Shown here piece after piece: positions 3,001 to 18,200 of a stretch of 64,000 bases of DNA. The notes below the pieces were generated by a model. That model saw only the letters and a list, made by a program, of their open reading frames with translations, ran no database searches and was not told the origin of the DNA. The position numbers were made by a program, and so were the translations under genes. How positions within the stretch are numbered: the first letter of the stretch is position 1; every line of letters starts with the position of its first letter. The stretch is taken from positions 1 to 64,000 of the IMG/VR virus record IMGVR_UViG_3300042540_001399; one strand, given 5' to 3'.

Positions 3001-6000
3001 GGTACTAGCGGCACAAATGGAACAGACGGAACGAGCGGAACTGATGGTACAAATGGATCAAGTGGTACAAACGGAACAGATGGTTCAAGTGGTACTAATG
3101 GTACGGACGGAACTTCAGGTACAAATGGGACTGATGGTACAAGTGGTACTAACGGAACAAATGGTACGGATGGTACTAGTGGAACTGATGGTACTTCAGG
3201 AACTAACGGAACAAACGGTTCAAGTGGTACAGATGGTACTAGCGGTTCAAATGGAACTAACGGTACTAATGGTACAAGTGGAACAAATGGTACCAACGGA
3301 ACTAGCGGAACAAATGGTACCAATGGTTCTTCAGGTACTAATGGAACTAATGGTACTTCAGGAACTAACGGTACAAATGGGACTTCAGGCACTAACGGAA
3401 CAAACGGATCATCAGGCACAAACGGTACTAATGGAACTTCAGGAACTGACGGTACGTCGGGAACTAATGGTTCAAGTGGTACCAACGGTACTAGCGGAAC
3501 TAATGGGACATCAGGTACGAATGGTACGAATGGTACTAGCGGAACTAATGGAACGTCAGGTACCAACGGAACATCAGGAACTAATGGTACGAATGGCACT
3601 AGCGGTACGAACGGAACTAATGGAACTTCAGGAACCAATGGTACGAATGGAACTAACGGTACAAATGGGACTTCGGGAACTAATGGTACAAATGGAACTT
3701 CAGGGACTAACGGTACCAATGGGACTTCAGGAACAAATGGAACCAACGGTACAAGCGGAACTGATGGAACTTCGGGTACAAATGGTACAAACGGTACTTC
3801 AGGTACTAATGGAACATCGGGAACAAACGGAACTTCCGGTACGAATGGAACAAATGGCTCAAGCGGCACTAATGGAACATCAGGTACAAACGGAACGGAC
3901 GGAACTTCAGGAACAAATGGAACTAGCGGAACCAATGGAACTTCGGGCACTAATGGAACAAATGGATCAAGTGGTACGAATGGAACTTCAGGAACGAATG
4001 GTACCAATGGAACATCAGGTACTAATGGGACTTCTGGTACAAACGGAACAAATGGTTCAAGTGGGACTAACGGTACATCAGGTACGAATGGAACTTCTGG
4101 CACTAATGGTACGAATGGGTCTAGCGGAACAAATGGAACTTCAGGTACAAACGGAACGAATGGTACAAACGGAACATCAGGTACGAACGGAACTAGTGGA
4201 ACAAACGGGACTAATGGTACTAGCGGAACAAATGGTACAAACGGAACATCAGGAACCAATGGAACCAATGGTACAAACGGAACTTCAGGTACAAATGGAA
4301 CCAATGGAACATCGGGCACTAACGGTACTTCAGGTACTAACGGTACGAATGGAACATCAGGTACTAACGGAACTAATGGTACTTCAGGTACGAATGGCAC
4401 AAGCGGAACCAATGGTACAAACGGAACAAATGGAACTTCGGGCACAAATGGATCAAGTGGTACGAATGGAACTTCAGGAACTAATGGTACTAACGGTACA
4501 AGTGGAACCAATGGTACAAACGGAACATCAGGTACGAATGGAACTTCAGGTACCAACGGAACAAATGGAACATCAGGAACGAATGGTACTTCGGGAACTA
4601 ACGGGACAAATGGTACGTCGGGCACAAATGGTACCGATGGGACTTCAGGTACAAATGGAACCAATGGTACTAGCGGGACTAATGGAACAAACGGGACTAG
4701 CGGGACCAATGGAACAAACGGGACTTCAGGTACGAACGGAACCAATGGATCAAGTGGGACAAACGGAACATCAGGTACTAACGGTACCAACGGAACATCA
4801 GGAACTAACGGGACAAATGGAACGTCAGGTACTAATGGGACATCTGGCACTAATGGTACTTCAGGAACCAACGGGACTAGTGGTACGAACGGAACAAATG
4901 GTTCAAGTGGAACTAATGGAACATCAGGCACCAACGGGACTTCAGGTACTAATGGTACTAACGGAACTTCGGGAACTAATGGGACTAGCGGTACTAACGG
5001 AACTAATGGAACTTCAGGTACAAATGGAACTTCGGGTACTAATGGGACAAGTGGTACAAATGGAACTAATGGTACATCAGGAACCAATGGCACTTCGGGA
5101 ACTAACGGTACATCAGGTACGAATGGAACAAATGGTAGTAGCGGAACAAACGGAACATCAGGAACTAACGGTACTAATGGGTCTTCGGGAACAAATGGTA
5201 CGAGTGGAACTAATGGTACTAGCGGAACTAATGGTACAAATGGTACGAGTGGAACTAATGGAACATCAGGGACTAATGGAACCAACGGAACCAATGGATC
5301 AAGTGGGACAAACGGAACATCAGGTACTAACGGTACCAACGGAACATCAGGAACTAACGGGACAAATGGAACGTCAGGTACTAATGGAACTAGCGGCACA
5401 AATGGAACTAGCGGCACAAATGGAACAAACGGTTCAAGTGGTACTAACGGGACAAATGGAACCTCAGGTACTAACGGCACAAACGGCACATCAGGAACCA
5501 ACGGTACTAGCGGCACAAATGGAACAAACGGAACTAGTGGAACAAACGGAACTTCAGGTACTAATGGTACAAATGGAACTAGCGGTACTAACGGAACTTC
5601 AGGTACTAATGGAACATCAGGTACTAACGGAACAAACGGAACTTCAGGTACGAATGGAACTTCGGGTACTAATGGAACAAATGGTTCAAGTGGAACTAAC
5701 GGTACTAGCGGAACGAATGGAACTAGTGGTACTAACGGTACAAATGGTACTAGTGGAACAAATGGGACATCAGGAACTAATGGTACGAACGGCACATCAG
5801 GTACCAATGGTACAAATGGAACATCAGGTACAAACGGAACTAGCGGTACGAATGGAACCAATGGAACTAATGGTACAAATGGGACTTCAGGAACTAACGG
5901 TACTAATGGTACGTCGGGTACAAATGGAACAAATGGAACTTCAGGTACCAACGGAACCAATGGATCAAGTGGTACAAACGGAACGTCAGGCACAAATGGT

Positions 6001-9000
6001 ACGAACGGTACAAATGGAACTTCAGGAACCAATGGAACTTCGGGCACAAACGGAACTAGTGGAACAAACGGAACTTCAGGTACAAATGGAACGAATGGAA
6101 CCTCAGGAACAAATGGTACTAACGGCACATCAGGAACAAACGGTACATCAGGTACAAATGGAACTAATGGCACATCAGGGACAAATGGTACTAACGGAAC
6201 TAGTGGAACAAACGGCACAAATGGTTCAAGTGGAACCAACGGTACTAATGGAACCTCAGGAACTAATGGTACGTCAGGAACTAATGGTACAAACGGATCA
6301 AGTGGAACAAACGGTACATCAGGAACTAACGGAACAAATGGTACATCGGGTACTAACGGCACAAACGGAACGTCAGGAACAAATGGTACTTCAGGCACTA
6401 ACGGAACCAATGGAACAAACGGAACTTCAGGTACGAATGGAACAAACGGTACTAGCGGAACTAATGGTACTTCAGGTACTAATGGAACTTCGGGAACGAA
6501 CGGAACAAATGGTACTAGCGGAACAAATGGTACTTCAGGTACAAATGGAACTAGTGGGACTAACGGTACTAATGGGACTTCAGGAACAAACGGAACTAAT
6601 GGTACATCAGGTACGAATGGAACTAGCGGAACAAACGGAACTTCAGGAACAAATGGAACCAATGGAACATCAGGGACTAATGGTACAAACGGCACTTCAG
6701 GTACTAATGGAACAAATGGAACCTCAGGGACTAATGGTACAAACGGCACTTCAGGTACTAATGGAACATCAGGAACAAATGGTACAAATGGAACTTCGGG
6801 GACAAACGGTACTTCAGGAACTAATGGTACAAACGGTACTTCGGGCACGAATGGAACCAGCGGAACAAATGGTACATCAGGAACTAACGGGACTAGCGGA
6901 ACTAATGGAACATCAGGTACAAATGGTACAAACGGATCTTCAGGGACTAACGGAACGAATGGAACCTCAGGAACTAACGGAACGAATGGAACCTCAGGAA
7001 CTAACGGAACAAATGGTACATCGGGTACGAATGGAACTAATGGTACATCGGGTACGAATGGAACAAATGGAACATCAGGTACTAATGGAACTTCAGGAAC
7101 AAACGGTACTAACGGAACTTCAGGTACAAACGGTACAAATGGGACTTCAGGTACAAACGGAACTAGCGGAACAAATGGAACAAATGGAACCTCAGGGACT
7201 AATGGAACTAGTGGGACAAACGGAACATCGGGTACAAACGGGACTAGTGGAACGAATGGTACTTCAGGGACAAATGGAACAAATGGATCAAGTGGTACAA
7301 ACGGAACATCCGGTACTAATGGAACAAACGGTACTTCAGGAACAAACGGTACTAACGGAACTTCAGGTACAAACGGTACAAATGGGACTTCAGGTACAAA
7401 CGGAACTAGCGGAACAAATGGAACAAATGGAACCTCAGGGACTAATGGAACTAGTGGTGTTAGTGGTTTAAATGGTACAAACGGAACTTCAGGAACCAAT
7501 GGGACTAATGGAACATCGGGTACTAGAGGTACTTCAGGTACTAATGGGACAAATGGTTCTTCAGGAACTAGTGGAGGTGGAGGTGGAGGCGCAATTTCTA
7601 TTTATGACGAAGGAATTTTAGTTCAATCAAGTGCCACAAGTTTAAATTTTGTCGGTGTGTGTACTACAGCATCATCAGGCACAAGCGGATCAGTCACAGT
7701 AAATATTGGTTGTGGATGTGAATACGAATATATTAATATAGCGTCAAACTCAGGTTATTTAGAATTAGACAAACCAACCGATTTTACTAAAATATGGATT
7801 GGTAATAAATTGGGTGGTTGGAATTGTTGTCCTTGGGATTATTTTGAACCAGGGGTTAATGGTAATTTGTCAAGAACAAGATATCCTTATTATGGTGTGC
7901 CATTACCAACATCTTTATATCCAGGAGATGTTGTTAGAATTTGTGGTTCAATAACACAAATAAATCAGGGTGGTAATCCATGTTTAACTTATGATGATAT
8001 AAGAGTTGGAGTGTCTTATATCAGTTGTTCTGATTCTAGTGCAATTATATTTGCAAATACATTGATACCGGCTACTGATCTTATTTTAAATGGTAATGGT
8101 ACGGCTTGTTTTAATTTAGAAGTTGGTATAGACGTTACCCTACCGGCTTGTGATACTATGTTAACAGTTAATATTTCAACAACACAAGAAAGTGAATGTG
8201 ATAGAACTTTACACTTCAGTTATACGCTTAACGCCGATAGATATTGTCCAACTTTTGATCCAACCCCAAATCTTGTAGCACAAAATTGTTGTGATCCTTT
8301 GATCAAAGAAGTAATTCCAAAAGGTACATTACAAGTCGGTGATTTTTATGCCGATAGTGAAGGAAACTGTTGGGAAATTTTACAAAAAACGGGTGATGCT
8401 CCTGACTATACAAGAATAGTTTCCGCGACTTATAATTCATGTTCGGCTTGTATAACAGCAAATCCATGTCCTCAAAATATAGTGTTTGAATCTTGTTGTG
8501 AACAGGCCCCTGAAACATTTACAGGTTCATTACCTGGTATTAATGTAGGTGATGTGTTTGTTGATACTTATGGATTCTGTTGGAGCGCAACATCATTGAC
8601 TGTATCACCAGTTTCTGGTATCGTATATGTTGACACTAATTATGGAAACGTAGATTGTTTGAATTGTTTAACAGGTAACCCATGTCCTAATGTTTTTGAA
8701 TTACAACCTTGTTGTAAGTTTTTGGGAGGTCCTTTCTTTGTAACTGCAGCATCTTTAGGATACACACCAGTTGTAGGTGAAGTATTTGTTGATACATGGG
8801 GTAATTGTTGGACAGTTTCGAAAGATCAAGCGACAGGTCAAAATGTGACCGCTCCGTGGATTGTTCATGATACAAGTTACACAAGTTGTGAGTTGTGTTT
8901 AGCTTCCAACCCATGTCAAGATGACACAATAATTTATGCCACAGTAAGAAATTGTTGTTCAGGTGACGTTGAAGTTGTTGCGGTACCTATGGTTTATTTA

Positions 9001-9372
9001 ACTGGTTTAGAAACCACGATATCTTTCAGTCAACCAGGAACACCTAATGTTTATGAGTGTTGGGAAGTTTTAGGTTGGGAATTAGTTGACACGCCAACGA
9101 TAACTTTCTATGCGTTAGGTGGGTTCTACATCGATTGTGTAAGATGTCTAATCGCGAATCCTTGTCCTGACTTTTACGAAGCAATAGATTGTTGTGGAAC
9201 TTTACCTAACGAAGTTGTTTTAAGCAATGGACCGACAGGAAGTGTTTTTGTTGATACTTTAGGACGTTGTTGGACTGTAGGTTTAGCAGTTGCCGGTCCT
9301 GCGACAATAACATCGAGTGGTAACTATTTAGATTGTACAGAATGTATAAACGTTAATCCATGTTCAGCATAA
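1..9372 (+). CDS. Giant collagen-like (G-X-Y) fibre protein with Cys-rich C-terminal head; 5' end lies outside the window
   Basis: Frame 1 reads SGTNGTDGTS... from base 1 and is the same frame as track ORF 2806..9372, so the TTG at 2806 is internal. Repeat region to 7572, then GGGGGG, an ISIYDEG...LNFVG motif typical of phage fibre junctions, a globular region and five Cys-rich repeats; stop TAA 9370-9372. Confidence 0.85.
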   Translation, partial: SGTNGTDGTSGTNGTSGTNGTDGTSGTNGTDGTSGTNGTSGTNGTDGTSGTNGTDGTSGTNGTSGTNGTSGTNGTSGTNGSSGTNGTNGSSGTNGTSGTNGTNGSSGTNGTNGSSGTNGTSGTGGTSGTNGTSGTNGTDGTSGLSGVNGTSGTNGTDGSSGTNGTDGSSGTNGTSGTSGTNGTSGTNGTSGSNGTDGTSGTDGTDGSSGTNGTSGTNGTDGTSGTNGTDGSSGTNGTDGTNGTDGTSGTNGTDGTSGTDGTDGSSGTDGTSGTNGTDGTSGTNGTDGTSGTNGTDGTSGTNGTDGTSGTDGTSGTNGTDGTSGTDGTSGTNGTDGTSGTNGTDGTSGTNGTDGTSGTNGTDGTNGTDGSSGTNGTDGTSGTNGTDGSSGTDGTSGLSGVNGTSGTNGTSGTNGTDGTSGTNGTSGTNGTDGTSGTNGTDGTSGTDGTSGTDGSSGTDGTSGSSGTNGTDGTSGTNGTNGTDGTSGTNGTDGTSGTNGTDGTSGTNGSDGTSGTNGTNGSSGTDGTNGSSGTNGTDGSSGTDGSSGTNGTDGSSGTDGTSGTDGTNGSSGTDGTSGTDGTNGSSGTNGTSGTDGTNGTDGTSGTDGTNGSSGTDGTSGTNGTNGSSGTDGTSGTNGTDGTSGTDGTNGTSGTDGTSGTDGTNGTDGTSGTNGTDGTSGTDGTSGTNGTDGTSGTDGTNGTSGTDGTNGTSGTDGTSGTNGTNGTSGTNGTDGTSGTNGTNGTDGTSGTNGTNGSSGTNGTSGTNGTDGTSGTNGTDGTSGTNGTNGSSGTNGTDGTSGTDGTSGTDGTNGSSGTNGTNGSSGTDGTSGTNGTDGTSGTNGTDGSSGTNGTNGTSGTNGTDGTSGTDGTSGTNGTDGSSGTNGTSGTNGTDGTSGTNGTSGTDGTNGTDGSSGTNGTDGTSGTNGTDGSSGTDGTSGLSGVNGTSGTNGTNGTNGTSGTNGTDGSSGTNGTDGTSGTNGTDGTSGTDGTNGTSGTNGTNGTDGTSGTNGTDGTSGTDGTNGSSGTNGTDGSSGTNGTDGTSGTNGTDGTSGTNGTNGTDGTSGTDGTSGTNGTNGSSGTDGTSGSNGTNGTNGTSGTNGTNGTSGTNGTNGSSGTNGTNGTSGTNGTNGTSGTNGTNGSSGTNGTNGTSGTDGTSGTNGSSGTNGTSGTNGTSGTNGTNGTSGTNGTSGTNGTSGTNGTNGTSGTNGTNGTSGTNGTNGTNGTNGTSGTNGTNGTSGTNGTNGTSGTNGTNGTSGTDGTSGTNGTNGTSGTNGTSGTNGTSGTNGTNGSSGTNGTSGTNGTDGTSGTNGTSGTNGTSGTNGTNGSSGTNGTSGTNGTNGTSGTNGTSGTNGTNGSSGTNGTSGTNGTSGTNGTNGSSGTNGTSGTNGTNGTNGTSGTNGTSGTNGTNGTSGTNGTNGTSGTNGTNGTNGTSGTNGTNGTSGTNGTSGTNGTNGTSGTNGTNGTSGTNGTSGTNGTNGTNGTSGTNGSSGTNGTSGTNGTNGTSGTNGTNGTSGTNGTSGTNGTNGTSGTNGTSGTNGTNGTSGTNGTDGTSGTNGTNGTSGTNGTNGTSGTNGTNGTSGTNGTNGSSGTNGTSGTNGTNGTSGTNGTNGTSGTNGTSGTNGTSGTNGTSGTNGTNGSSGTNGTSGTNGTSGTNGTNGTSGTNGTSGTNGTNGTSGTNGTSGTNGTSGTNGTNGTSGTNGTSGTNGTSGTNGTNGSSGTNGTSGTNGTNGSSGTNGTSGTNGTSGTNGTNGTSGTNGTSGTNGTNGTNGSSGTNGTSGTNGTNGTSGTNGTNGTSGTNGTSGTNGTSGTNGTNGSSGTNGTNGTSGTNGTNGTSGTNGTSGTNGTNGTSGTNGTSGTNGTNGTSGTNGTSGTNGTSGTNGTNGTSGTNGTSGTNGTNGSSGTNGTSGTNGTSGTNGTNGTSGTNGTSGTNGTNGTSGTNGTNGTSGTNGTSGTNGTNGTNGTNGTSGTNGTNGTSGTNGTNGTSGTNGTNGSSGTNGTSGTNGTNGTNGTSGTNGTSGTNGTSGTNGTSGTNGTNGTSGTNGTNGTSGTNGTSGTNGTNGTSGTNGTNGTSGTNGTNGSSGTNGTNGTSGTNGTSGTNGTNGSSGTNGTSGTNGTNGTSGTNGTNGTSGTNGTSGTNGTNGTNGTSGTNGTNGTSGTNGTSGTNGTSGTNGTNGTSGTNGTSGTNGTSGTNGTNGTSGTNGTNGTSGTNGTSGTNGTSGTNGTNGTSGTNGTNGTSGTNGTNGTSGTNGTNGTSGTNGTSGTNGTNGTSGTNGTSGTNGTNGTSGTNGTSGTNGTSGTNGTSGTNGTSGTNGTNGSSGTNGTNGTSGTNGTNGTSGTNGTNGTSGTNGTNGTSGTNGTNGTSGTNGTSGTNGTNGTSGTNGTNGTSGTNGTSGTNGTNGTSGTNGTSGTNGTSGTNGTSGTNGTSGTNGTNGSSGTNGTSGTNGTNGTSGTNGTNGTSGTNGTNGTSGTNGTSGTNGTNGTSGTNGTSGVSGLNGTNGTSGTNGTNGTSGTRGTSGTNGTNGSSGTSGGGGGGAISIYDEGILVQSSATSLNFVGVCTTASSGTSGSVTVNIGCGCEYEYINIASNSGYLELDKPTDFTKIWIGNKLGGWNCCPWDYFEPGVNGNLSRTRYPYYGVPLPTSLYPGDVVRICGSITQINQGGNPCLTYDDIRVGVSYISCSDSSAIIFANTLIPATDLILNGNGTACFNLEVGIDVTLPACDTMLTVNISTTQESECDRTLHFSYTLNADRYCPTFDPTPNLVAQNCCDPLIKEVIPKGTLQVGDFYADSEGNCWEILQKTGDAPDYTRIVSATYNSCSACITANPCPQNIVFESCCEQAPETFTGSLPGINVGDVFVDTYGFCWSATSLTVSPVSGIVYVDTNYGNVDCLNCLTGNPCPNVFELQPCCKFLGGPFFVTAASLGYTPVVGEVFVDTWGNCWTVSKDQATGQNVTAPWIVHDTSYTSCELCLASNPCQDDTIIYATVRNCCSGDVEVVAVPMVYLTGLETTISFSQPGTPNVYECWEVLGWELVDTPTITFYALGGFYIDCVRCLIANPCPDFYEAIDCCGTLPNEVVLSNGPTGSVFVDTLGRCWTVGLAVAGPATITSSGNYLDCTECINVNPCSA
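4..7572 (+). repeat. 9-nt / 3-aa G-X-Y coding repeat (GTN, GTS, GTD, GSS), 841 triplets
   Basis: 7569 nt = 841 x 9; Gly at every third residue wherever checked; synonymous codons heavily varied. Confidence 0.95.
8272..9369 (+). repeat. Five tandem 6-cysteine modules (CC...G-x-VFVD-x-x-G-x-CW...CxxC...NPC)
   Basis: Directly visible in the translation of the fibre C-terminus; units of about 65-85 aa. Confidence 0.9.
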
Positions 9373-9400
9373 AAAAACCCCACTTTAAAGGTGGGGTTTA
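9371..9400. terminator. Intrinsic terminator between convergent genes, probably bidirectional
   Basis: AAACCCCAC-tttaaag-GTGGGGTTT hairpin with an A-run on the left (U-tract on the minus strand). Confidence 0.8.
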
Positions 9401-9404
9401 AGTT

Positions 9405-12323
9405 TTATTTTCTATTATCAAAATAAAATATTACTTCACAATACCACTCTAAAAAATGATCATTAAATAAATCCCATTTAATATCAACACCATCAACAGA
9501 ATAAACTTCATAATTATCAAAGTTAGAAAGAACATTATCCCTAAACCATTTAAATTTACATTTATTAAAATGTTCGTCATCTCTTAAATGAAATTCGGTT
9601 ACAATCTTAGGAATTGTTTTTAAAAATTCTACGTTGCTTGGTTGAAAAACATCGTATTCCCCACCTTCACAATCACATTTTAAAAAATCAATTTTGTTAA
9701 TATTTTCATTTTCTAAAAATTCTTTAAAACTAAATGTAGGAACACTTTCAGTTATTCCATCCCAACTGATTTCAATTTTCTTTTTATCAGTAATTGCTCC
9801 CTGTATAATTTTTACATTATCTTCACCAACATTTTTATGAAGAACTTCAATCTGATATGATAATGGTTCAACTACATAACATTGTTTTGGATTTTTAGGT
9901 AATATTTTATATGTAAATGGACCTAAAGATGCGCCCAAATCTACAACAATATCTCCTTCTTCAACTTCAAAGAATCTTTCATATGTATTATTTTCAAATA
10001 TTTCTTTAGTTGCTTGATTAACATACCAATCACTTTTTTTACCCCAATCGAATGAAGTTTCTTCATTTTTTTCAATCATTAATTCTTTATTTATTATTTT
10101 GTTTATTTCCAAAATGACCATTTCTGAAGTAATTTCTTTCGTACACTCAAACATCCTATCTGTGTTTTTATGTAATGGACACCAATTCCAATCACCAGCA
10201 TCCAATCTTTCCGAATTGAAACATCCGTGACAAACATTTTCATTTATGACTCTGTATGTATTTAAAGTTGTTTCCGCCCATCTTTCACTAAAACCCGATA
10301 TTAAAACAATAGGTAATTCACAAGCCCAAGCCAACCAACTAAGACCTGAACCGAGACCAATAAAAAATTCACATGTTGATAAATCATCAACTACTTCTTG
10401 TAGATTTCCCCCTTTAAATAATTTTACACCTTCAGGATAGTTGTTATTCATGTATCCGTTACCTTCCTTTGAATATATGACACATTCATAACCAAGGGAT
10501 AAAAGGTAGTTCACAACTTCTTGCCATCCATTTGTGTTGTTCCAATATTTTGCCTGAGCAGTTGAATGAAAACCAATACCAACTTTTTTTTCTTTTTTTA
10601 TTTTAGGTAATTTTAATTTTGGTCTTATTTCATTGTATTGTAAACCTAATATATCTGAAGCCGTTTTTTGTAATGGTTGTTTTTTTACATCGACTTTGTG
10701 GATATTTGAATTGATAGTCCCATCTTCATTGTAAAACCAACCTAATCTATATTGTGCGTATATGTTTTGAACAATAACACCCGGTTCGACAAATTCAATT
10801 TCTGTATATTGTTCTTTGAACAAATAGTTCATGAAGGTAGAAACGATTAGTTTACATTTGTGTTTGATTCTAAATTCTTCACAATATGGTAACCATGCTA
10901 AGGTATCCCCTAAAGATTTTGAACCGAATGATATGTAGACTCTTTTATTTTCCAAGTTAAGTAAATTACTATAAATTAGTTGTCCATTTTCTTTTACTTC
11001 GGTTTTCCAAGGTACATAATATTCCGTATTGAGTCTTACCCAATGGTTGATTGGTAATTCGTTTGAATAAATTAAATTATTTTCATCATATATTTTTATA
11101 TCAAGTTTGTTTTCAGTACTACCCAATATTTCCAAAAAAGGATTAACAACAAAATGTTGATTAAACGTGTAATCATTTTTGTGTTTTTGGTTTTGTACTT
11201 TGTCATTTTCTAAAACTCTTTTATAAAATGAATATAATTGTTCCCCAAAATCTTGTTGGGTTTCTATTTCATATGAAGATTCTTTTTCAATTAAACTTAA
11301 TAATTGTTCTGATATTTTTTTATAATCATCATTTTCAATACTTGTGATGTATCTGTCGAACATCCCCATGTACTGAGGTAGGTTTCTGGTCAATATTTTC
11401 ATTCCGTAGTTGATTGCTTCTCTTACAACCAAAGGATTACATTCCCATGTTGAATTGAACATCAAAACATCACATGACTCCATGAATTTATCAACGTCAT
11501 TTCTTTCACCCCATACCGTAACATTTGAAGGTAAGTTTTCCATTATTGGTTTCCAATAAGATTCAAAATTGGGGGCTTGGTTTCCTATGAAGTGAAAATG
11601 TAAATCGGGATTAGTATGTTCCAATAATTTTGCAACTTCGATACCTTCTTTTTGATTTTTTCCTTCGGTCCAAAGACCAACATTAAGAATGTGTGTTTTC
11701 ATTGGGTCCAACCCAAGATTTTCTCTTTCTGTTATTTTTTTCAAAAGAGGTATTTTATGATGTTCATAATAGATTTGTAATTCTTCTAAAATAGGTTTGA
11801 CTTTGTTTTCATATGGGTACAAATGAAGTTCTTTAAGTGATCTTTCAGATTCAAAAGTGGTAAAATGAAAAGGACTAACGAATGAATATGCGTCAGGATG
11901 AAATTTTTTATTATTTGGGTTAAACCAAACATTGTGACACGTTTCAACAATATTCCAAGATCGTTGATTATCATAAAGTTCGTTCAAAATGTCCAATGTA
12001 ATTTTATTAAAACTTTCAAAGGCTTCGGGTATTTCTTCTGAATGAATGATATCTATTTTTAAATCCTTAATTATTTTTAAAAGTTCTTTTTTTCTACTTG
12101 ATTCTGTTGTTGATCCCAAAGTAAAAAAATGACCTACATCTAATAAATCAATGATTTTGTTTCTTTGTACGATATATGTGTCACTAAATTGAGAATATTC
12201 TACTAAAAAAATATCAAGTTTATCTTTGTATTTCAGAAGTGATTCAATTCTTTTTAGGACAAACTGTGGCATACCACCAGTTGATAAATGTGGCGTTAGA
12301 TATAGTATTTTAATTTTTTGCAT
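9405..12323 (-). CDS. Three-domain enzyme: GT4-type glycosyltransferase + TibC/Aah-like protein O-heptosyltransferase + FkbM-family methyltransferase
   Basis: N-term HLSTGG and E-CNPLVVR-E (GT4 EX7E); middle SKSLGDTLAWLPY, FFIGLGSGLSWLAW and CHGC...WCP...FECT iron-finger as in TibC/Aah; C-term VVDLGASLG, VEP, IDFLKCDCEGGE (FkbM). Confidence 0.8.
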   Translation of the reverse strand: MQKIKILYLTPHLSTGGMPQFVLKRIESLLKYKDKLDIFLVEYSQFSDTYIVQRNKIIDLLDVGHFFTLGSTTESSRKKELLKIIKDLKIDIIHSEEIPEAFESFNKITLDILNELYDNQRSWNIVETCHNVWFNPNNKKFHPDAYSFVSPFHFTTFESERSLKELHLYPYENKVKPILEELQIYYEHHKIPLLKKITERENLGLDPMKTHILNVGLWTEGKNQKEGIEVAKLLEHTNPDLHFHFIGNQAPNFESYWKPIMENLPSNVTVWGERNDVDKFMESCDVLMFNSTWECNPLVVREAINYGMKILTRNLPQYMGMFDRYITSIENDDYKKISEQLLSLIEKESSYEIETQQDFGEQLYSFYKRVLENDKVQNQKHKNDYTFNQHFVVNPFLEILGSTENKLDIKIYDENNLIYSNELPINHWVRLNTEYYVPWKTEVKENGQLIYSNLLNLENKRVYISFGSKSLGDTLAWLPYCEEFRIKHKCKLIVSTFMNYLFKEQYTEIEFVEPGVIVQNIYAQYRLGWFYNEDGTINSNIHKVDVKKQPLQKTASDILGLQYNEIRPKLKLPKIKKEKKVGIGFHSTAQAKYWNNTNGWQEVVNYLLSLGYECVIYSKEGNGYMNNNYPEGVKLFKGGNLQEVVDDLSTCEFFIGLGSGLSWLAWACELPIVLISGFSERWAETTLNTYRVINENVCHGCFNSERLDAGDWNWCPLHKNTDRMFECTKEITSEMVILEINKIINKELMIEKNEETSFDWGKKSDWYVNQATKEIFENNTYERFFEVEEGDIVVDLGASLGPFTYKILPKNPKQCYVVEPLSYQIEVLHKNVGEDNVKIIQGAITDKKKIEISWDGITESVPTFSFKEFLENENINKIDFLKCDCEGGEYDVFQPSNVEFLKTIPKIVTEFHLRDDEHFNKCKFKWFRDNVLSNFDNYEVYSVDGVDIKWDLFNDHFLEWYCEVIFYFDNRK

Positions 12324-12379: not shown

Positions 12380-13381
12380 ATGCCAAACTCAGTTAAATAT
12401 TCAACAACAGGGGATACTCGATCAATAAAAAAAGGAAATTTGTATTTTGGTGTTGGTGACGTTCCAAAAGGACCAAGTACCAACACATCTTATTTTAATG
12501 GTATTACACCTGTTACTGGTGGTTATACTGTATATAGGTACGAGCCAACACAAAGTAGTAAACTTGCTTTTTATACTAATCAAACAGGAACTGATCTTGT
12601 AAATTATACAAATAATTTTTTAGGACAAAACTTTTCAACATCAACACAATGTGTGAATTGGTTCAACACACAAACGAATTATGTTTGTGTAAATAAAGAC
12701 TATGACCCAATAATTACTTCAGGACTGACTCTATGTTTAGACGCGTCTTTCACCCCATCATATTCTACTTCTGGAAATTCTTGGTATGATTTATCATATA
12801 ATTCATTTACAACAACTTTAGTTAATGGACCAACATTTGATTCGGGAAATGGCGGATCAATACAGTTTGATGGAACCGACGATCAATGTGTAGTTACGTC
12901 AAATGGGTTTGGTACGTTCAATAATCAGAAATATACAATCGAGGCTTGGGTTAATTTTGCAAGTAATAGTGGGGATATTCCAATTTTTAGTTATGATTAT
13001 TCAAGTTTTAACAACCCATATTATTCTGCTCACCTTAGAAACACGGGTACGGGACAAATATTTTTAGGTTGGAACATGTCGGGATTTTATTACAATATAC
13101 AAACTACATCGACTGTGATTTTTCCCAATACTTGGTATTATGTTGTTGGTATTGTTGAAAGTGGAAGACAACAAATTTATGTTAATAGTAACTTGTGGGC
13201 TAGTGGGACTATATCAGGAACAATAACATTTTATAACACTCCTGTTTATGTTGGGTATTTTCCAAATGCACCTTTAGTCATGAATGGAAAAATTGCCGTG
13301 GTTAGAGTTTATAATAGAGCATTTTCTTCTTCAGAAGTAAGTCAAAATTGGAATGCACAAAAAACAAGATTCGGATATTAA
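12380..13381 (+). CDS. LamG/concanavalin A-like lectin domain virion protein
   Basis: LCLDAS..SY..SGNSWYDLS, FDGTDD, YTIEAWV, WYYVVG, GKIAVVRVYNRA, NWNAQKTRFG pattern of phage LamG proteins. Confidence 0.75.
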   Translation: MPNSVKYSTTGDTRSIKKGNLYFGVGDVPKGPSTNTSYFNGITPVTGGYTVYRYEPTQSSKLAFYTNQTGTDLVNYTNNFLGQNFSTSTQCVNWFNTQTNYVCVNKDYDPIITSGLTLCLDASFTPSYSTSGNSWYDLSYNSFTTTLVNGPTFDSGNGGSIQFDGTDDQCVVTSNGFGTFNNQKYTIEAWVNFASNSGDIPIFSYDYSSFNNPYYSAHLRNTGTGQIFLGWNMSGFYYNIQTTSTVIFPNTWYYVVGIVESGRQQIYVNSNLWASGTISGTITFYNTPVYVGYFPNAPLVMNGKIAVVRVYNRAFSSSEVSQNWNAQKTRFGY

Positions 13382-13422
13382 GGAATTAAATTTTGAAACA
13401 TAATATTTATTTAAAAAAAGTT

Positions 13423-14415
13423 ATGTCAACATCTAGACCTTTTTCATATAATACTGGCTCAACAATAAATGGTACAATACAAGTTGGAAGTTTGGCGGTA
13501 GGATTCCCAACCGTAGGATTTGATTCTACTGGTTTAGAATGGTGGAATGGTCCTGATGAAGATTTAGGTTATGTTATTGCACAACCCGTACCAAATGATA
13601 GTCAACCAACACCTGTGCTTGGACAAACCGCTTCTGTTGGTTTTTTTAGAACCAACGGTTTTGATGATAATGAATTTTTAGACATAACAAATATTTTGTT
13701 AGGAACAAATTATATAGATCCATTTTTAGCATCCTCTGCACTTACAGTAAATGGATTTTGGAATTCTTATCCTAATCCAGTTTTATATTTAGACGCTGGT
13801 GACCCTGCTAGTTATTCAGGAAGTGGTTCCGTTTGGATTGATACAATAGGAGGTAAAACTTTCAACTTAGTTAATGGACCATCTTACGGTCCTGGTTTTG
13901 GTGGAATTCTTAACTTCAACGCGTCAAGTGGTCAATACGCCCAATGTAACACGAGTTTACCAAATTTGAGTAATTGGACGGTTTCTGTTTGGAATTATTA
14001 TGATGGTACAAACGTCGGAGGAGCACCTTGTATTGTTACTGAAATTTATCCGGGTACTACAAGCAACATAAATTATTCAATTGGTGTGAATAATAGTGGA
14101 TTTAACGCCGGGTTTTTCAATGGGGCTTGGAGAGAAAGTGGAACCTATTCATTAAGTCCAAATAATTGGTATTTTATTGTTGGCACATATGATGGTAACA
14201 CATTGAAACTATATATTAATAATACTTTAGTTGGTACAGGAAATTACACTGGTACTCCTATATCATCTCAAGGAGGAATAAGGTTGATGAGAAGATGGGA
14301 TCTTCCCGATTATTGGGGCGGACTGTTAGGTACTGTTGGTATATATGACTTTGCACTCAATTCAGGACAAATATCTGCAATATGGAATACAACTAAATCA
14401 AGGTTTGGTTTGTAA
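13423..14415 (+). CDS. LamG/concanavalin A-like lectin domain virion protein
   Basis: LYLDAGDPASYSGSGSVW, WYFIVGTYDG..LKLYIN, IYDFALNS..WNTTKSRFGL. ATG 13423 after the TATTTAT motif is preferred to the track start at 13393. Confidence 0.75.
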   Translation: MSTSRPFSYNTGSTINGTIQVGSLAVGFPTVGFDSTGLEWWNGPDEDLGYVIAQPVPNDSQPTPVLGQTASVGFFRTNGFDDNEFLDITNILLGTNYIDPFLASSALTVNGFWNSYPNPVLYLDAGDPASYSGSGSVWIDTIGGKTFNLVNGPSYGPGFGGILNFNASSGQYAQCNTSLPNLSNWTVSVWNYYDGTNVGGAPCIVTEIYPGTTSNINYSIGVNNSGFNAGFFNGAWRESGTYSLSPNNWYFIVGTYDGNTLKLYINNTLVGTGNYTGTPISSQGGIRLMRRWDLPDYWGGLLGTVGIYDFALNSGQISAIWNTTKSRFGL

Positions 14416-14468: not shown

Positions 14469-15401
14469 ATGAAAGAAATTTGTATTGATGTTACAGGTTG
14501 TCGTGCTTTGGGCGACACTTTATGTGCAACACCTGTGGTTAAAAAAATAAGTAATACTTATAATAAAAAAGTTTCGGTAGTTTCTCACCACCCAAAATTA
14601 TTTACTAACTTATCATACGTTGAAAACAGTTTTGAATACAACCCAAAATTGTTTGATGATTTGAAAAAAGATTACGATATCTTTCCAACTTTTGATGTGT
14701 CATACAAAGACAATGGAATTTGTAACAAGCACAACTCTATGGATATAAGACAACTACACGCAATAAACTTAGGATTTATGTTGACTAAAGAAGAATCTTC
14801 TTTGGATTATGTACCAGATGCTTGTATCTTACCCATTTTACCAAAAAAATACGTTTTAATCCACCCCGTTCAAAATTGGAATTCAAGGACATGGCCGGCC
14901 AAAAATTGGCAAATATTAACAAAACTTTTAAATGAAAAAGGAATTTACGTTGTATCTGTTGGAAAAGATTCTTCTGAATTAGGTGGGTCTAATGTAGATA
15001 AACCCGTTTTCAATTTTGAAATAGAACTTGGATTAAATCTTATGAACAAAACAACTTTGGATGAAACATGGTATCTGTTAAATGGTTGTTCTTGTTTTGT
15101 AACTATGGACTCTGGACTATTACATTTAGCCGGTACAACAGATTGTGAAATACTACAACTTGGTAGCTCAATAGATCCTGAATTCAGAGCACCATATAGA
15201 CATGGTTCACAAGAATATAAGTATCATTATGTTAGAGGGGGTTGTGGTTTACATTGTGCTTCTGATATGAAGTATGGCGTTAGAGAATGGGGATCGATAC
15301 AAGGAATACCATCTTTAGTTAATTGTTTAGAAAGAAAAAAAACTTTTGAGTGTCATCCTTCTGTTTTACAGATTTATCAAAAAATCTTAGAAATAATATA
15401 A
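14469..15401 (+). CDS. GT9 (heptosyltransferase-like) glycosyltransferase
   Basis: ALGDTLCATP, YVLIHP...SRTWP..NW, FVTMDSGLLHLAG; C-terminal four-Cys cluster. Confidence 0.8.
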   Translation: MKEICIDVTGCRALGDTLCATPVVKKISNTYNKKVSVVSHHPKLFTNLSYVENSFEYNPKLFDDLKKDYDIFPTFDVSYKDNGICNKHNSMDIRQLHAINLGFMLTKEESSLDYVPDACILPILPKKYVLIHPVQNWNSRTWPAKNWQILTKLLNEKGIYVVSVGKDSSELGGSNVDKPVFNFEIELGLNLMNKTTLDETWYLLNGCSCFVTMDSGLLHLAGTTDCEILQLGSSIDPEFRAPYRHGSQEYKYHYVRGGCGLHCASDMKYGVREWGSIQGIPSLVNCLERKKTFECHPSVLQIYQKILEII

Positions 15402-15948: not shown

Positions 15949-17196
15949 ATGAAAATTTTTATACAAATTGCATCCTACAGAGATCCACAGTTATTACCCA
16001 CAATTAAAAACTGTATTGAAAATTCAAAACACCCCGAAAATTTAATTTTTTCAATTGCAAGACAATATCACATAGAAGATGGGTTTGATGATTTATCTGA
16101 ATTTGAAAACGACAATAGATTCAAAGTGATCAACATACCCTACACAGAATCCAAAGGGGTTTGTTGGGCAAGAAACATGACACAACAACAATACAATAAT
16201 GAAGAATATACCCTTCAAATTGACTCACACATGAGATTTGAAAAAAATTGGGATGAAACATTAATAGGTATGATTAAAGACTTACAGAAAAAAGGATTTA
16301 AAAAACCTTTACTAACAAGTTATGTTTCTTCATTCGATCCTGAAAACGATCCAACAGGAAGGGTAAATGAACCTTGGAGAATGGCTTTCGATAGATTCAC
16401 ACCCGAAGGTTGTGTTTTTTTCTTACCTGAAGTAATTCCTAATTGGAAAGAACTTGATGGTCCTGTACCATCAAGATTTTATTCCGCACATTTTTGTTTT
16501 ACCTTGGGTCAATTTTCTAAAGAAGTTCAGCACGATCCTGAATATTATTTTCATGGAGAAGAAATATCAATCGCCGTAAGAGCATTTACTCATGGATATG
16601 ATTTGTTTCACCCACACCGTGTGGTCATTTGGCATGAATACACAAGAAAGGGTAGAACAAAACAATGGGATGATGATAAAGAATGGTTTTTGAAAAATGA
16701 CTTTTCACACTCTAAAAACAGAAAACTATTAGGTGTTGACGGTGAAGAACTTGGGAATTTGTCAGACTCTTATGGATTTGGAAAACAAAGAACATTAAGA
16801 GATTATGAAAAATATTCAGGAATATTGTTTTCAAAAAGGGCGGTTCAAAAATATACTTTAGACAAAAATTACCCACCAAACCCAAACAATTTTTCTTCTG
16901 AAGAAGAATGGGAAAAAAGTTTCTCAATGATTTTCAAACACTGTATTGATGTATCATTTAATGACGTACCTGAAAATGATTATGAGTTTTGGGTTGTTGC
17001 CTTTCATAATGAAAAAGATGAAACATTATTTAGACATGATGCTGATGTAAAAGAAATAATTCAAATGAAAAAAGATCCTGATGGTTATTGTAAAGTATGG
17101 AGAGAATTTGATACAACTGAAAAACCCAAGTATTGGGTTGTTTGGCCCTATTCTAAATCCAAGGGATGGTGTAACAGATTAACAGGTAATTTATAA
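15949..17196 (+). CDS. GT60-family polypeptide alpha-GlcNAc transferase (Skp1 Gnt1-like)
   Basis: IFIQIASYRD, SKGVCWAR, LQIDSHMRF..NWD, FHGEEISIAVRAFTHGYDLFHP, WHEY motifs. Confidence 0.8.
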   Translation: MKIFIQIASYRDPQLLPTIKNCIENSKHPENLIFSIARQYHIEDGFDDLSEFENDNRFKVINIPYTESKGVCWARNMTQQQYNNEEYTLQIDSHMRFEKNWDETLIGMIKDLQKKGFKKPLLTSYVSSFDPENDPTGRVNEPWRMAFDRFTPEGCVFFLPEVIPNWKELDGPVPSRFYSAHFCFTLGQFSKEVQHDPEYYFHGEEISIAVRAFTHGYDLFHPHRVVIWHEYTRKGRTKQWDDDKEWFLKNDFSHSKNRKLLGVDGEELGNLSDSYGFGKQRTLRDYEKYSGILFSKRAVQKYTLDKNYPPNPNNFSSEEEWEKSFSMIFKHCIDVSFNDVPENDYEFWVVAFHNEKDETLFRHDADVKEIIQMKKDPDGYCKVWREFDTTEKPKYWVVWPYSKSKGWCNRLTGNL

Positions 17197-18200
17197 TGAT
17201 GGAACTTAACATTAGGCACGAATTTAGGGATCTCAGACTTGGTAACAATGAATTTTACGTTACAAGTTTTTTTAAAAAATTTTATGAAAGTTTAAAAACA
17301 AAATATCCTGAAATAAATTTTAGTATAAAAAATGAAACTTCTTTTGGGAAGTATGGTCAGGGGGGAATTTATAGCTGCATGAATTTTTCTATAGTGAACC
17401 CTATCAACAAAAAGTATGTCTTGATTTCTTTTTTTGATAATTGGAAATATCATTTCATGTCTCATTTAGGTTGGGAGGCTAATAAAATGGTTCAATTTTT
17501 TTATCCCGGCGGATTCAATTTTTATGATTATTTTACCTTTAAGGACACTTCAAAAAATAATTCTGACTTACAGTTTCCAAAAAACATGGACGATATTTTT
17601 ACCCCTTTTTATTATGGACCTTACTTTGATTGTTGTTATGAAGAAATTAATAACATATACAAACAAAATTTAAACAAGGAAAAAATCAATAAATTGTATT
17701 TCAGGGGTTGGATGTGGGATTTCAGAAAAGAAATGGTAAGTAAAATAAATCAAGAAGACATATTAATAATTGATAAAAATAAAAATAATCAGACTTTAAA
17801 TTACTTAGAATTTTTAGAAGATAGTTCCAAATATTCTGCGGTATTGAGTTTACCAGGTGGTAATGAAATGTGTAATAGAGATATAGAATGTTTTGGAATT
17901 GGAGTACCTGTAATAAGACCAGCAGTAAACGTAAAATACAAAGATCCTCTGATACCTAACTATCATTATATTAGTTGTTATGATTTTTGTGATTATTCAA
18001 TTGACGGAAATCCAAAATATATTTCCAACGAAGATTTTCAAAAAAATTTAATAAAAAAATGGAACTCAGTAAAAAATAATAAAGAATATTTAGATTTCGT
18101 TTCAAAAAATGCAAGATCTTGGTTTGAAAAAAATTGTAGGGTGGATAAAAATATAACGTGCGTTTTGGAACAATTAAACTTAGAAAAACTTTTTGAATAA
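17196..18200 (+). CDS. Putative GT-B glycosyltransferase (GT90/GT47-like C-terminal half)
   Basis: KLYFRG, LSLPGG...RDIE..GIGVPVIRP, LIPNYHYI, NARSWFEK; translationally coupled to its GT neighbours. Confidence 0.55.
   Translation: MMELNIRHEFRDLRLGNNEFYVTSFFKKFYESLKTKYPEINFSIKNETSFGKYGQGGIYSCMNFSIVNPINKKYVLISFFDNWKYHFMSHLGWEANKMVQFFYPGGFNFYDYFTFKDTSKNNSDLQFPKNMDDIFTPFYYGPYFDCCYEEINNIYKQNLNKEKINKLYFRGWMWDFRKEMVSKINQEDILIIDKNKNNQTLNYLEFLEDSSKYSAVLSLPGGNEMCNRDIECFGIGVPVIRPAVNVKYKDPLIPNYHYISCYDFCDYSIDGNPKYISNEDFQKNLIKKWNSVKNNKEYLDFVSKNARSWFEKNCRVDKNITCVLEQLNLEKLFE

What the first reader, a model, noticed from the sequence alone, without database searches (positions are those of the whole stretch)
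9405..12323. GT4 + autotransporter heptosyltransferase + FkbM methyltransferase in one polypeptide
Seen: three motif sets in order, including the four-Cys iron finger. Known: TibC/Aah are stand-alone enzymes serving proteobacterial adhesins and use ADP-heptose. Inference: a one-protein initiate, extend and methylate assembly line. No sugar-nucleotide synthesis genes are in the window, so donors must come from the host or elsewhere in the genome and may not be heptose.
Basis: partly seen in the sequence, partly recalled or inferred. Interest (0 to 1): 0.7.

Follow-up and report, generated by a model that had tools for sequence, protein, structure and literature searches.

The report
Phage three-module enzyme glycosylating collagen-like fibre
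A lake jumbo phage encodes one 972-residue protein that joins two sugar-adding modules (one a close structural copy of the iron-containing TibC enzyme of E. coli) to a methylating module. It sits tail to tail with a giant threonine-rich collagen-like fibre gene, which is probably the protein it decorates.

Summary
ORF 9405-12323 (minus strand, 972 aa) is GT4 (residues 1-372), then a TibC/Aah-type module (386-745), then an FkbM methyltransferase (765-972).

- **TibC likeness.** The middle module scores 281 bits on TIGR04414 (cut-off 200) against about 20 bits on LPS heptosyltransferases. Its model overlays TibC (TM 0.85). It keeps the catalytic Asp, Thr/Lys/Trp donor contacts and all four iron-binding Cys. 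The adenine-reading Arg286 is Val.
- **Not a one-off.** The window is the start of a 291-kb lake jumbo myovirus. The same fusion recurs in more than 100 metagenomic proteins at 70-98% identity. TibC-like modules occur in many other fusions.
- **Likely acceptor.** The convergent neighbour, sharing one terminator hairpin, is the genome's only collagen-like gene: about 3,300 aa with about 875-915 uninterrupted G-T-(N/S/D) triplets and no Pro or Lys.
- **Family split.** Classical enzymes (Arg286) sit beside autotransporters. The sister clade holds all phage copies and some bacterial ones, never sits beside autotransporters, and in 41 of 79 cases lies within 5 kb of a Ser/Thr-rich G-X-Y repeat gene.

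Best reading: O-glycosylation, extension and methylation of the phage's collagen-like fibre. The donor sugar is unproven. This is a new variant of a known kind.

The parts
9405..12323 (-). Whole 972-aa three-module ORF (P0001), stop codon included
   Evidence: AF2 model has mean pLDDT 90.5. More than 100 full-length homologues at 70-98% identity.
11208..12323 (-). Module 1, residues 1-372: GT4-type (retaining GT-B) glycosyltransferase with E294-x7-E302
   Evidence: Pfam PF00534 E 8e-16 and PF13692. Foldseek hits PimB', BshA, MshA, PglA and WaaG at E about 1e-11. Motif located.
10962..11168 (-). Module 2a, residues 386-454: eight-stranded beta domain matching the N-terminal beta-barrel of TibC
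   Evidence: Strands in the model. The Foldseek alignment covers about 380 of TibC's 381-390 residues. Barrel described in PMC4358343.
10089..10961 (-). Module 2b, residues 455-745: TibC/Aah-type catalytic domain. It has D473 (TibC D110), T588, K592, W663, a thumb tip Y624-M625, and V644 in place of R286 and G658 in place of P300.
   Evidence: Residue roles from PMC4358343.
10143..10232 (-). Four-Cys 'iron finger' (C698, C701, C715, C727)
   Evidence: Aligned to TibC C339/342/358/370. Each Cys is conserved in 138 of 142 related domains.
9408..10031 (-). Module 3, residues 765-972: FkbM-family SAM methyltransferase. It follows the only low-confidence linker in the model (residues 746-756).
   Evidence: PF05050 E 8e-11. 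TIGR01444 52.6 bits against 37.7. phrog_8156 methyltransferase. Model; motif.
9375..9399 (.). Hairpin (AAACCCCAC...GTGGGGTTT) with T-runs on both strands, in the 32-bp gap between the two convergent genes. It looks like a shared two-way terminator.
1..9372 (+). Proposed acceptor: the C-terminal 3,123 aa of the giant collagen-like fibre gene. Bases 4-7572 are 841 of 841 in-phase G-T-(N/S/D) triplets. Bases 7573-9372 are a 599-aa part holding five Cys-rich repeats of about 70 aa. The N-terminus (92 aa plus 74 triplets) lies at the other end of the record.
   Evidence: The whole 3,313-aa ORF is uninterrupted in a second assembly, L047.
12380..14415 (+). Two Laminin_G_3 proteins (12380-13381 and 13393-14415) that match a 'virion structural protein' PHROG. 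They are transcribed divergently from the fusion gene.
   Evidence: Present in 25-30 of 80 related loci.
14469..15401 (+). Stand-alone GT9-like glycosyltransferase (310 aa), the most constant partner of the fusion
   Evidence: PF01075 E 1.6e-16. Weak heptosyltransferase II/I matches. Present in 46 of 80 related viral loci.
15949..17196 (+). PF11397 'GlcNAc' glycosyltransferase (415 aa)
   Evidence: PF11397 E 5e-70. phrog_24687 E 1e-164. Present in 24 of 80 loci.
18200..19879 (+). HtrL/YibB-like protein (559 aa), from a family found in LPS-core gene clusters
   Evidence: PF09612 E 3e-18. TIGR02192 78.7 bits, below the cut-off. Present in 16 of 80 loci.

Best explanation
The gene encodes a cytoplasmic, three-module protein-glycosylation enzyme of a lake jumbo myovirus. 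Its most likely acceptor is the phage's own giant collagen-like fibre protein, encoded tail to tail with it.

Proposed steps, all inferred:
1. The TibC-like module recognises the polypeptide and puts the first sugar on Thr/Ser hydroxyls of the (G-T-N/S/D)n repeat.
2. The GT4 module adds a further sugar. The separate GT9, PF11397 and HtrL-like enzymes of the same island may do likewise.
3. The FkbM module O-methylates the glycan.

The donors are host nucleotide sugars. ADP-heptose is the default by homology but is not established. The repeat has no Pro, Lys or Glu, so dense O-glycosylation may be what lets it fold and stay folded as a triple helix of about 0.75 micrometre. It would also give the fibre a sugar surface.

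Shown here: the architecture, the fold, the conserved catalytic and iron-binding residues, the gene linkage and its recurrence. Inferred: the acceptor, the sugars, the order of the steps and the structural role.
For: 1. **Identity of the modules.**
2. **Active-site integrity.** D110, K230 and W305 equivalents are conserved in 141-142 of 142 related domains and the four Cys in 138 of 142. The GT4 E-x7-E and FkbM SAM motifs are present.
3. **Linkage.** The genome holds one collagen-like gene in 291 kb. It is the direct convergent neighbour, 32 bp away, and shares a hairpin terminator.
4. **Recurrence.** 47 of 80 related viral loci carry a G-[TS]-[SN] run within 10 kb, in at least six different arrangements. 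The tips differ: the C-terminal domain is shared by only 4 loci.
5. **Independent cellular cases.** In Methylococcales, Burkholderiaceae, Bradyrhizobium and other genomes, stand-alone TibC-like genes of about 380 aa lie 70-120 bp from small secreted proteins with (G-T-S)n or (G-S-S)n runs.
6. **Family split.** A branch with support 100 separates the autotransporter-linked enzymes (27 of 53 beside an autotransporter, 2 beside a collagen-like run) from the clade holding the phage copies (0 of 79 beside an autotransporter, 41 of 79 beside a collagen-like run).
7. **Family habit.** All four annotated plasmid TibC-type genes inspected sit directly next to their substrate gene.
8. **The TibC-like module is the constant partner of the repeat.** GT4 and FkbM come and go, which fits the TibC-like module being the protein-directed one.
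9. **Precedents.** SgtA sits next to bclA3 and O-GlcNAcylates Thr of its collagen repeats (PMC7157674). PBCV-1 A064R is a proven viral GT+GT+methyltransferase (PMC9614988). (Gly-Pro-Thr)10 becomes triple-helical only when its Thr residues are galactosylated (PMC11923368).
10. **Neighbours.** The adjacent LamG proteins match a virion structural protein family.
Against: - There is no biochemical or proteomic evidence. The acceptor is inferred from gene neighbourhood only.
- The split between autotransporter-linked and collagen-linked enzymes is essentially one deep event. The independent-pairs tests were uninformative.
- 33 of 80 viral loci show no collagen-like run. Some are cut by contig ends, but a subclade at about 52% identity (L066-L080) lacks it even with full flanks.
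- Studied TibC acts on a folded beta-helix and works as a dodecamer. Whether a fusion with two extra modules can form that ring, or accept an extended G-X-Y chain, is unknown.
- Arg286, whose mutation abolished or largely diminished TibC activity, is Val here.
- The collagen-like protein is not shown to be a virion part. Its end domains match nothing.
- The one structure-based binding test could not be run.
Confidence: 0.55

Rival explanations
1. Host-surface remodelling. The enzyme and the other glycosyltransferases of the island act on host LPS, capsule or another envelope glycan during infection, for example to block superinfection. This is the usual reading of glycosyltransferase clusters in jumbo phages.
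For: Jumbo-phage GT clusters have been read this way (PMC7824862). The island holds GT9-like and HtrL/YibB-like genes whose relatives work on the LPS core. GT4 enzymes are commonly glycolipid or polysaccharide transferases. The phage makes no sugar nucleotides of its own apart from an RmlB-like step.
Against: The middle module scores 281 bits on the protein O-heptosyltransferase model against about 20 bits on LPS heptosyltransferases, and it has the beta-barrel and iron finger specific to TibC. Its relatives in cells pair with repeat-protein genes, not LPS clusters. The island is embedded among structural genes: the fibre, the LamG virion proteins and, about 19 kb away, the tail sheath.
Confidence: 0.15
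2. It is a protein glycosyltransferase, but for another acceptor: a different virion protein (capsid, tail, LamG proteins) or a host protein. On this reading the collagen-like neighbour is only a syntenic companion.
For: One third of related loci, including a whole subclade, lack a nearby collagen-like run. The LamG virion proteins and other large structural ORFs are also close. Adjacency in close relatives may be inherited synteny.
Against: The pairing recurs in different orientations and distances, with different fibre tips, and in unrelated cellular genomes where the only constant neighbour is the Ser/Thr G-X-Y repeat protein.
Confidence: 0.2
3. The TibC-like module is a non-catalytic scaffold or oligomerisation module, or the whole ORF is an assembly chimera or a decaying gene.
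For: Arg286 is lost. TibC's iron finger and thumb serve assembly.
Against: The catalytic Asp and the phosphate and sugar contacts are invariant across 142 domains. The full-length ORF recurs in more than 100 independent assemblies. An independent 2016 run has an identical 2,350-nt contig that spans the TibC-FkbM junction and extends past the gene's 3' end. The model has pLDDT 90.5.
Confidence: 0.04

Closest known systems
TibC / Aah, the bacterial autotransporter heptosyltransferase (BAHT) family (TIGR04414; PDB 4RAP, 4RB4)
   Same: Same fold end to end: beta-barrel, GT-B core, thumb and four-Cys iron finger. Foldseek E 1e-33, TM 0.85, rmsd 2.9 A, 36% identity. The catalytic Asp and the Thr/Lys/Trp donor contacts are the same. 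The gene sits next to a long repeat-protein gene.
   Different: It is fused to two other enzymes and encoded by a phage. It falls in a sister clade that is never beside autotransporters. Arg286 is Val and Pro300 is Gly. The neighbour is a collagen-like G-T-X repeat, not a beta-helical passenger. Donor, acceptor and oligomeric state are untested.
PBCV-1 A064R, a chlorovirus three-domain enzyme (two rhamnosyltransferases plus a methyltransferase)
   Same: A virus-encoded single polypeptide with two glycosyltransferase modules followed by a sugar O-methyltransferase. It builds and caps the glycan of a virion protein in the cytoplasm (PMC9614988).
   Different: A064R is 638 aa. Its first domain has a GT-A fold and its second founds a new GT family. 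It extends an N-glycan on the capsid protein and does not initiate on protein. Its host is eukaryotic. I found no evidence of homology and did not test for it.
SgtA / BclA3 of Clostridioides difficile, and BclA of Bacillus
   Same: A collagen-like surface protein rich in Thr, O-glycosylated on Thr (Ser is also accepted) by a glycosyltransferase encoded next to it (PMC7157674).
   Different: SgtA is a GT-A enzyme that uses UDP-GlcNAc. The repeats are G-P-T with Pro, a few hundred residues long rather than about 2,600. The system is bacterial, not viral.
Mimivirus L230 with its collagen-like proteins
   Same: A virus-encoded multi-domain enzyme that modifies and glycosylates the virus's own collagen-like proteins (PMC9614988).
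   Different: L230 hydroxylates Lys and glucosylates hydroxylysine. It has a GT25-like domain and a PLOD-like domain. The repeat here has no Lys at all.
LPS heptosyltransferases WaaC/WaaF (GT9)
   Same: A distantly related GT-B core. Pfam PF01075 matches residues 571-676 weakly.
   Different: 19.6 bits against a 185-bit cut-off. They lack the beta-barrel and iron finger and take a lipid-linked acceptor. The separate 310-aa GT9-like gene at 14469-15401 is nearer to this group.

Membership tests
BAHT (TibC/Aah, TIGR04414) | Scores above the curated cut-off of the family model | tested here: met
   281.4 bits against 200, residues 400-743, profile positions 24-374 of 374. 284.5 bits in the six-frame search.
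BAHT (TibC/Aah, TIGR04414) | Protomer fold: N-terminal beta-barrel, GT-B catalytic domain, beta-hairpin thumb and iron-finger insertion | tested here: met
   The AF2 model (pLDDT 90.5) aligns to about 380 columns of TibC at TM 0.82-0.85 and rmsd 2.9 A. The thumb tip F265-V266 corresponds to Y624-M625.
BAHT (TibC/Aah, TIGR04414) | Four Cys that coordinate the ferric ion (C339, C342, C358, C370) | tested here: met
   C698, C701, C715 and C727. Conserved in 138 of 142 related domains. Iron binding itself is not testable here.
BAHT (TibC/Aah, TIGR04414) | Catalytic base Asp110 and donor contacts Thr226, Lys230, Trp305 | tested here: met
   D473, T588, K592 and W663. Invariant or nearly so in 142 domains.
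BAHT (TibC/Aah, TIGR04414) | [quoted passage not shown] | tested here: not met
   Val644 here. Arg in all 4 plasmid BAHTs, in 55 of 80 cellular loci, in 0 of 81 viral rows and in 40 of 142 nearest cluster representatives.
BAHT (TibC/Aah, TIGR04414) | Acceptor is the passenger domain of an AIDA-type autotransporter encoded next door | tested here: not met
   No autotransporter lies next to any of 79 clade-B genes. The neighbour here is a collagen-like ORF.
BAHT (TibC/Aah, TIGR04414) | Falls within the clade of the characterised, autotransporter-linked enzymes | tested here: not met
   Sister clade separated by a branch with support 100 in FastTree (132 rows) and in IQ-TREE with LG+C20 (67 rows). 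The root is not inferred.
BAHT (TibC/Aah, TIGR04414) | Uses ADP-heptose and O-links heptose to Ser | not testable with these tools
   The phage has no ADP-heptose pathway genes. The host is unknown.
BAHT (TibC/Aah, TIGR04414) | Ring-shaped dodecamer | not tested
LPS heptosyltransferases (GT9: WaaC/WaaF) | Scores at family level on the heptosyltransferase I/II/III models | tested here: not met
   heptsyl_trn_I 19.6 bits against a cut-off of 185.3.
GT4 (Pfam Glycos_transf_1) | Domain model above the gathering score, GT-B fold and E-x7-E motif | tested here: met
   58.5 bits against 26.4. Foldseek hits to PimB', BshA, MshA and PglA. E294 and E302.
FkbM methyltransferases (PF05050 / TIGR01444) | Domain models above their cut-offs and a glycine-rich SAM-binding motif | tested here: met
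   42.8 bits against 22.7. 52.6 bits against 37.7. The VVDLGASLG motif has D795, G797 and G801 conserved in the homologues that carry the module.
Collagen-like glycoprotein with a dedicated neighbouring glycosyltransferase (BclA3/SgtA type) | Ser/Thr-rich G-X-Y repeat protein encoded next to the transferase | tested here: met
   Glycosylation itself is not testable here.

The most novel reading that the evidence does not exclude
The TibC-like fold has a second, unrecognised branch whose natural acceptors are Ser/Thr-rich G-X-Y (collagen-like) repeats rather than autotransporters. The branch is spread through freshwater phages and diverse bacteria. In jumbo phages it has been built into modular glycan assembly enzymes. 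These make a sugar-coated, Pro-free collagen fibre about 0.75 micrometre long, whose folding depends on the glycosylation.
Probability: 0.4. Interest if true: 0.8.

Novelty: new variant of a known kind. Interest (0 to 1): 0.68.

Why it matters
- **Scope of the enzyme family.** TibC-type enzymes are known only as virulence-associated modifiers of E. coli-type adhesins. A large sister branch aimed at collagen-like repeats would widen the known scope of cytoplasmic protein O-glycosylation in bacteria and phages. It would also show that automatic 'autotransporter O-heptosyltransferase' labels on these genes are wrong about the acceptor.
- **Phage biology.** Glycosylation of virion parts is documented mostly for giant viruses of eukaryotes. 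A common lake phage that carries its own fibre-glycosylation island would be a tractable prokaryotic counterpart.
- **Collagen science.** A 2,600-residue repeat with no Pro and almost no charged residue other than Asp would test the idea that Thr glycosylation alone can hold a triple helix together.
- **Testability.** Everything proposed can be tested by co-expression in E. coli.

Tried and rejected
- **Enzyme-substrate prediction.** There is no evidence either way and I did not repeat it.
- **Record-end overlap.** My early note that the record's ends overlap by 281 nt was wrong. Only 62 nt are identical, as expected inside a repeat. Continuity of the fibre gene rests instead on L047 and L005.
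- **Association tests.** Independent-pairs tests of Arg286 against the collagen or autotransporter neighbour had too few independent changes to say anything.
- **End domains of the fibre protein.** The 599-aa C-terminal and 92-aa N-terminal domains have no Pfam or PHROG match, and the C-terminal domain has no Atlas match.
- **Cultured relatives.** megablast against cultured phages found nothing. By protein, the nearest cultured phage with the module is Microcystis phage Mel-JY01 (49%), where it ends a 1,226-aa 'FkbM' protein.
- **Literature.** No paper in the held library links TibC-type enzymes with collagen-like proteins or treats them as phage genes.
- **Transcription.** One lake metatranscriptome holds a few short identical pieces of the gene. 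DNA carry-over cannot be excluded.
- **Rejected readings.** An LPS-type GT9 reading of the middle module. An NCLDV origin of the window: it has a tail sheath, DnaB and UvsX.
Full report
**What is there.** The finding's coordinates are exactly one ORF, 9405..12323 on the minus strand, 972 aa without stops.
- Glycos_transf_1 (GT4), residues 197-362, E 8e-16.
- A GT9-like stretch that NCBIfam resolves as TIGR04414 'autotransporter strand-loop-strand O-heptosyltransferase', residues 400-743, 281.4 bits against a curated cut-off of 200.
- FkbM methyltransferase: PF05050 E 8e-11; TIGR01444 52.6 bits against 37.7.

**Match to TibC.** Against solved structures, residues 413-744 align to TibC residues 49-387 at 219 bits, E 1e-63. 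An AlphaFold2 model built on 56 homologues has mean pLDDT 90.5. Its only weak segment is the linker 746-756. In Foldseek, TibC chains take the first 21 places (E 1e-33, TM 0.82-0.85 on TibC's length, rmsd 2.9 A, about 380 columns). That includes TibC's N-terminal beta-barrel, which is residues 386-454 here. GT4 enzymes follow for the N-terminal module.

**Residue-level check against the TibC paper (PMC4358343).**
- Conserved: catalytic base D110 is D473; the beta-phosphate contacts T226 and K230 are T588 and K592; the heptose contact W305 is W663; the iron ligands C339, C342, C358 and C370 are C698, C701, C715 and C727.
- Different: R286, which hydrogen-bonds adenine N1 and whose Ala mutant abolished or largely diminished activity, is Val644. 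P300, the D,D-heptose selectivity residue, is Gly658.
- Across 142 related domains, D110, K230 and W305 are invariant or nearly so and the four Cys are present in 138. Position 286 is Arg in only 40 (Val 35, Leu 19, Thr 19, Ile 15, Ala 9).
- Four plasmid enzymes that sit beside AIDA-type autotransporters all have Arg there.

The catalytic machinery is therefore intact, but ADP-heptose as donor is a default, not a finding.

**Where it lives.** The window is the first 64 kb of a 290,887-bp virus record that CheckV rates 99% complete. It carries a tail sheath, a DnaB-like helicase, a UvsX-like recombinase and a family B polymerase, so it is a jumbo myovirus. The gene is found in at least 19 lake or freshwater metagenome runs from 2016 to 2024. 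One of them has an identical 2,350-nt contig that spans the TibC-FkbM junction and extends past the gene's 3' end. The whole genome lacks GmhA, cytidylyltransferase-like and NTP-transferase genes. It has one RmlB-like dehydratase at about 121.8 kb.

**The fusion is not unique.** A word-indexed search found 2,964 relatives. The best 120 are all 70-98% identical over the full length and about 970 aa long, on contigs of up to 238 kb. Variants carry an extra GT25-like or methyltransferase module. An exhaustive search with the middle module alone found 1,444 clusters at 50% identity, 761 of them at E below 1e-30. All 150 nearest score higher than TibC does, and most are multidomain proteins of 370-2,033 aa. 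Of these, 34 contain a GT4-like part, 35 an FkbM-like part and 7 all three, in several orders. Some have two or three TibC-like modules in tandem.

**The neighbour.** The ORF that converges on the gene (1..9372, plus strand) is 841 in-phase G-T-(N/S/D) triplets followed by a 599-aa part holding five Cys-rich repeats of about 70 aa. The two genes are 32 bp apart. The gap is filled by a hairpin with T-runs on both strands. The gene's start (92 aa plus 74 triplets) lies at the other end of the record. In a second assembly with an identical enzyme (L047) the ORF is uninterrupted: 3,313 aa with 874 triplets. A third assembly has 901. It is the only collagen-like gene in the genome. The repeat has no Pro, Lys or Glu, 811 Thr, 403 Ser and 431 N-x-S/T sequons. 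As one triple helix it would be about 750 nm long.

**Is the pairing meaningful?**
- Of 80 related viral loci, 47 have a G-[TS]-[SN] run within 10 kb of the TibC-like module. The arrangements include convergent downstream at 1-4 kb, upstream on either strand, and co-directional downstream at 0.4-4.5 kb. In L004 the contig breaks inside such a repeat, and the C-terminal domain there is unrelated. The window's C-terminal domain recurs in only 4 loci, whereas the stand-alone GT9 gene recurs in 46.
- A scan of one genome per prokaryotic species found 578 relatives. Among the 80 best, those most like the phage module are stand-alone genes of about 380 aa. They occur in Methylococcales, Burkholderiaceae, Bradyrhizobium and other Gammaproteobacteria. 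They lie 70-120 bp from small proteins that have a signal peptide or lipobox and a (G-T-S)n or (G-S-S)n run. One is on a 2.67-Mb contig.
- A tree of 132 distinct domains splits into two groups on a branch with support 100, and IQ-TREE with LG+C20 on 67 rows reproduces the split. The first group is 53 cellular sequences, nearly all with Arg286. Of these, 27 lie beside an autotransporter and 2 beside a collagen-like run. The second group is 79 sequences: all the viral ones plus 30 cellular ones. None lies beside an autotransporter and 41 lie beside a collagen-like run within 5 kb.
- The contrast is essentially one deep event, so it is not a statistical proof, and the independent-pairs tests were uninformative. 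The variety of taxa and arrangements within the second group still argues for a functional link.

**Mechanism proposed.** Studied TibC-type genes sit next to their substrate genes. The TibC-like module is also the one constant partner of the repeat. I therefore take it to be the protein-directed module, which puts the first sugar on Thr/Ser. GT4, together with the separate GT9, PF11397 and HtrL-like enzymes of the island, would extend the glycan, and FkbM would methylate it.

This is the logic proven for PBCV-1 A064R, a viral protein with two rhamnosyltransferase domains and a 2-O-methyltransferase domain (PMC9614988). The enzyme-next-to-collagen-like-substrate pattern is proven for SgtA/BclA3, where Thr of G-P-T repeats is O-GlcNAcylated (PMC7157674).

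A structural role is plausible. (Gly-Pro-Thr)10 is a random coil until its Thr residues are galactosylated, and Thr-rich triplets in microbial and viral collagens have been explained this way (PMC11923368). The repeat here lacks both Pro and the Lys/Glu or Lys/Asp salt bridges that the same paper finds elsewhere.

All of this paragraph is inference.

**Rivals.**
- The standard reading of jumbo-phage glycosyltransferase clusters is remodelling of the host surface against superinfection (PMC7824862). It cannot be excluded for the island as a whole, but it fits the TibC-like module poorly.
- A different protein acceptor remains possible, since a subclade at about 52% identity has no collagen-like neighbour.
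- A non-catalytic or artefactual gene is unlikely.

**Comparison and verdict.** By model score, fold, iron finger and catalytic residues the middle module belongs to the TibC structural family. It fails three features of the characterised family: Arg286, an autotransporter acceptor, and placement within the autotransporter-linked clade. I therefore file it as a new variant, not as an 'autotransporter heptosyltransferase'. No paper in the held library connects this family with collagen-like proteins or treats it as a phage gene. The one structural binding test was not run by the tool. The finding is real and conserved, and cheap to test.

Noticed in passing
window 1-9372 and G000:289938-290887 (L169:9938-10885); complete in L047: Giant collagen-like gene of about 3,300 aa with 874-915 uninterrupted G-T-(N/S/D) triplets, depending on the assembly. 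It has no Pro, Lys or Glu and 431 N-x-S/T sequons. The record is cut inside this repeat, so the genome is probably circularly permuted although IMG/VR lists it as linear.
   Followed up: yes
window 7573-9372: The C-terminal 599 aa of the fibre protein hold five Cys-rich repeats of about 70 aa (CC...CW...C..C...NPC). They have no Pfam, PHROG or Atlas match. The domain is swapped for unrelated domains in related phages, as expected of a receptor-binding tip.
   Followed up: partly
L091, L093, L095, L097, L098, L101, L106, L113, L114 (cellular genomes): Stand-alone TibC-like genes next to small secreted or lipoproteins with (G-T-S)n or (G-S-S)n runs, in Methylococcales, Burkholderiaceae, Bradyrhizobium and other Gammaproteobacteria. 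This looks like an undescribed bacterial enzyme-substrate pair.
   Followed up: partly
P0124, P0131, P0138, P0203, P0248 (metagenomic proteins): Proteins with two or three TibC-like modules in tandem. Others reach 2,033 aa and combine GT4, FkbM and TibC-like parts in different orders.
   Followed up: partly
G000:121848-122774 (L083:1495-2421): RmlB-like dTDP-glucose 4,6-dehydratase (304.7 bits, below the 365-bit cut-off). It is the only sugar-nucleotide-modifying enzyme found in the genome and hints at a 6-deoxy sugar in some phage glycan.
   Followed up: partly
G000:282154-283368 (-), 286256-289132 (+), 289134-289922 (+) (L169): A further glycosyltransferase (phrog_7162). Directly upstream of the fibre gene and in the same direction lie a 958-aa protein with a papain-like C-terminal domain and a 262-aa protein of unknown function.
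   Followed up: no
window 31451-34774: The tail sheath protein is unusually long (1,107 aa). Only its last 200-280 residues match sheath families. The nearest cultured relative is Microcystis phage Mel-JY01 (36%).
   Followed up: no
window 39378-44216 and 44531-50938: Two further very large ORFs (1,612 and 2,135 aa). The first has no PHROG match. The homologous position in L003 holds a 2,307-aa protein with collagen-like runs.
   Followed up: no
L117 (Nitrosotalea MAG) and L094 (238-kb contig binned as Pseudobdellovibrionaceae): TibC-like genes with collagen-like neighbours on contigs assigned to an archaeon and to a predatory bacterium. The 238-kb contig may be a misbinned jumbo phage.
   Followed up: no
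L084 (Microcystis phage Mel-JY01, 4750-8430): A cultured cyanophage has a 1,226-aa protein annotated only as 'methyltransferase FkbM'. Its C-terminal third is a TibC-like module (49% identical). It lies next to a 'structural protein' and near a cytidylyltransferase-like gene.
   Followed up: partly
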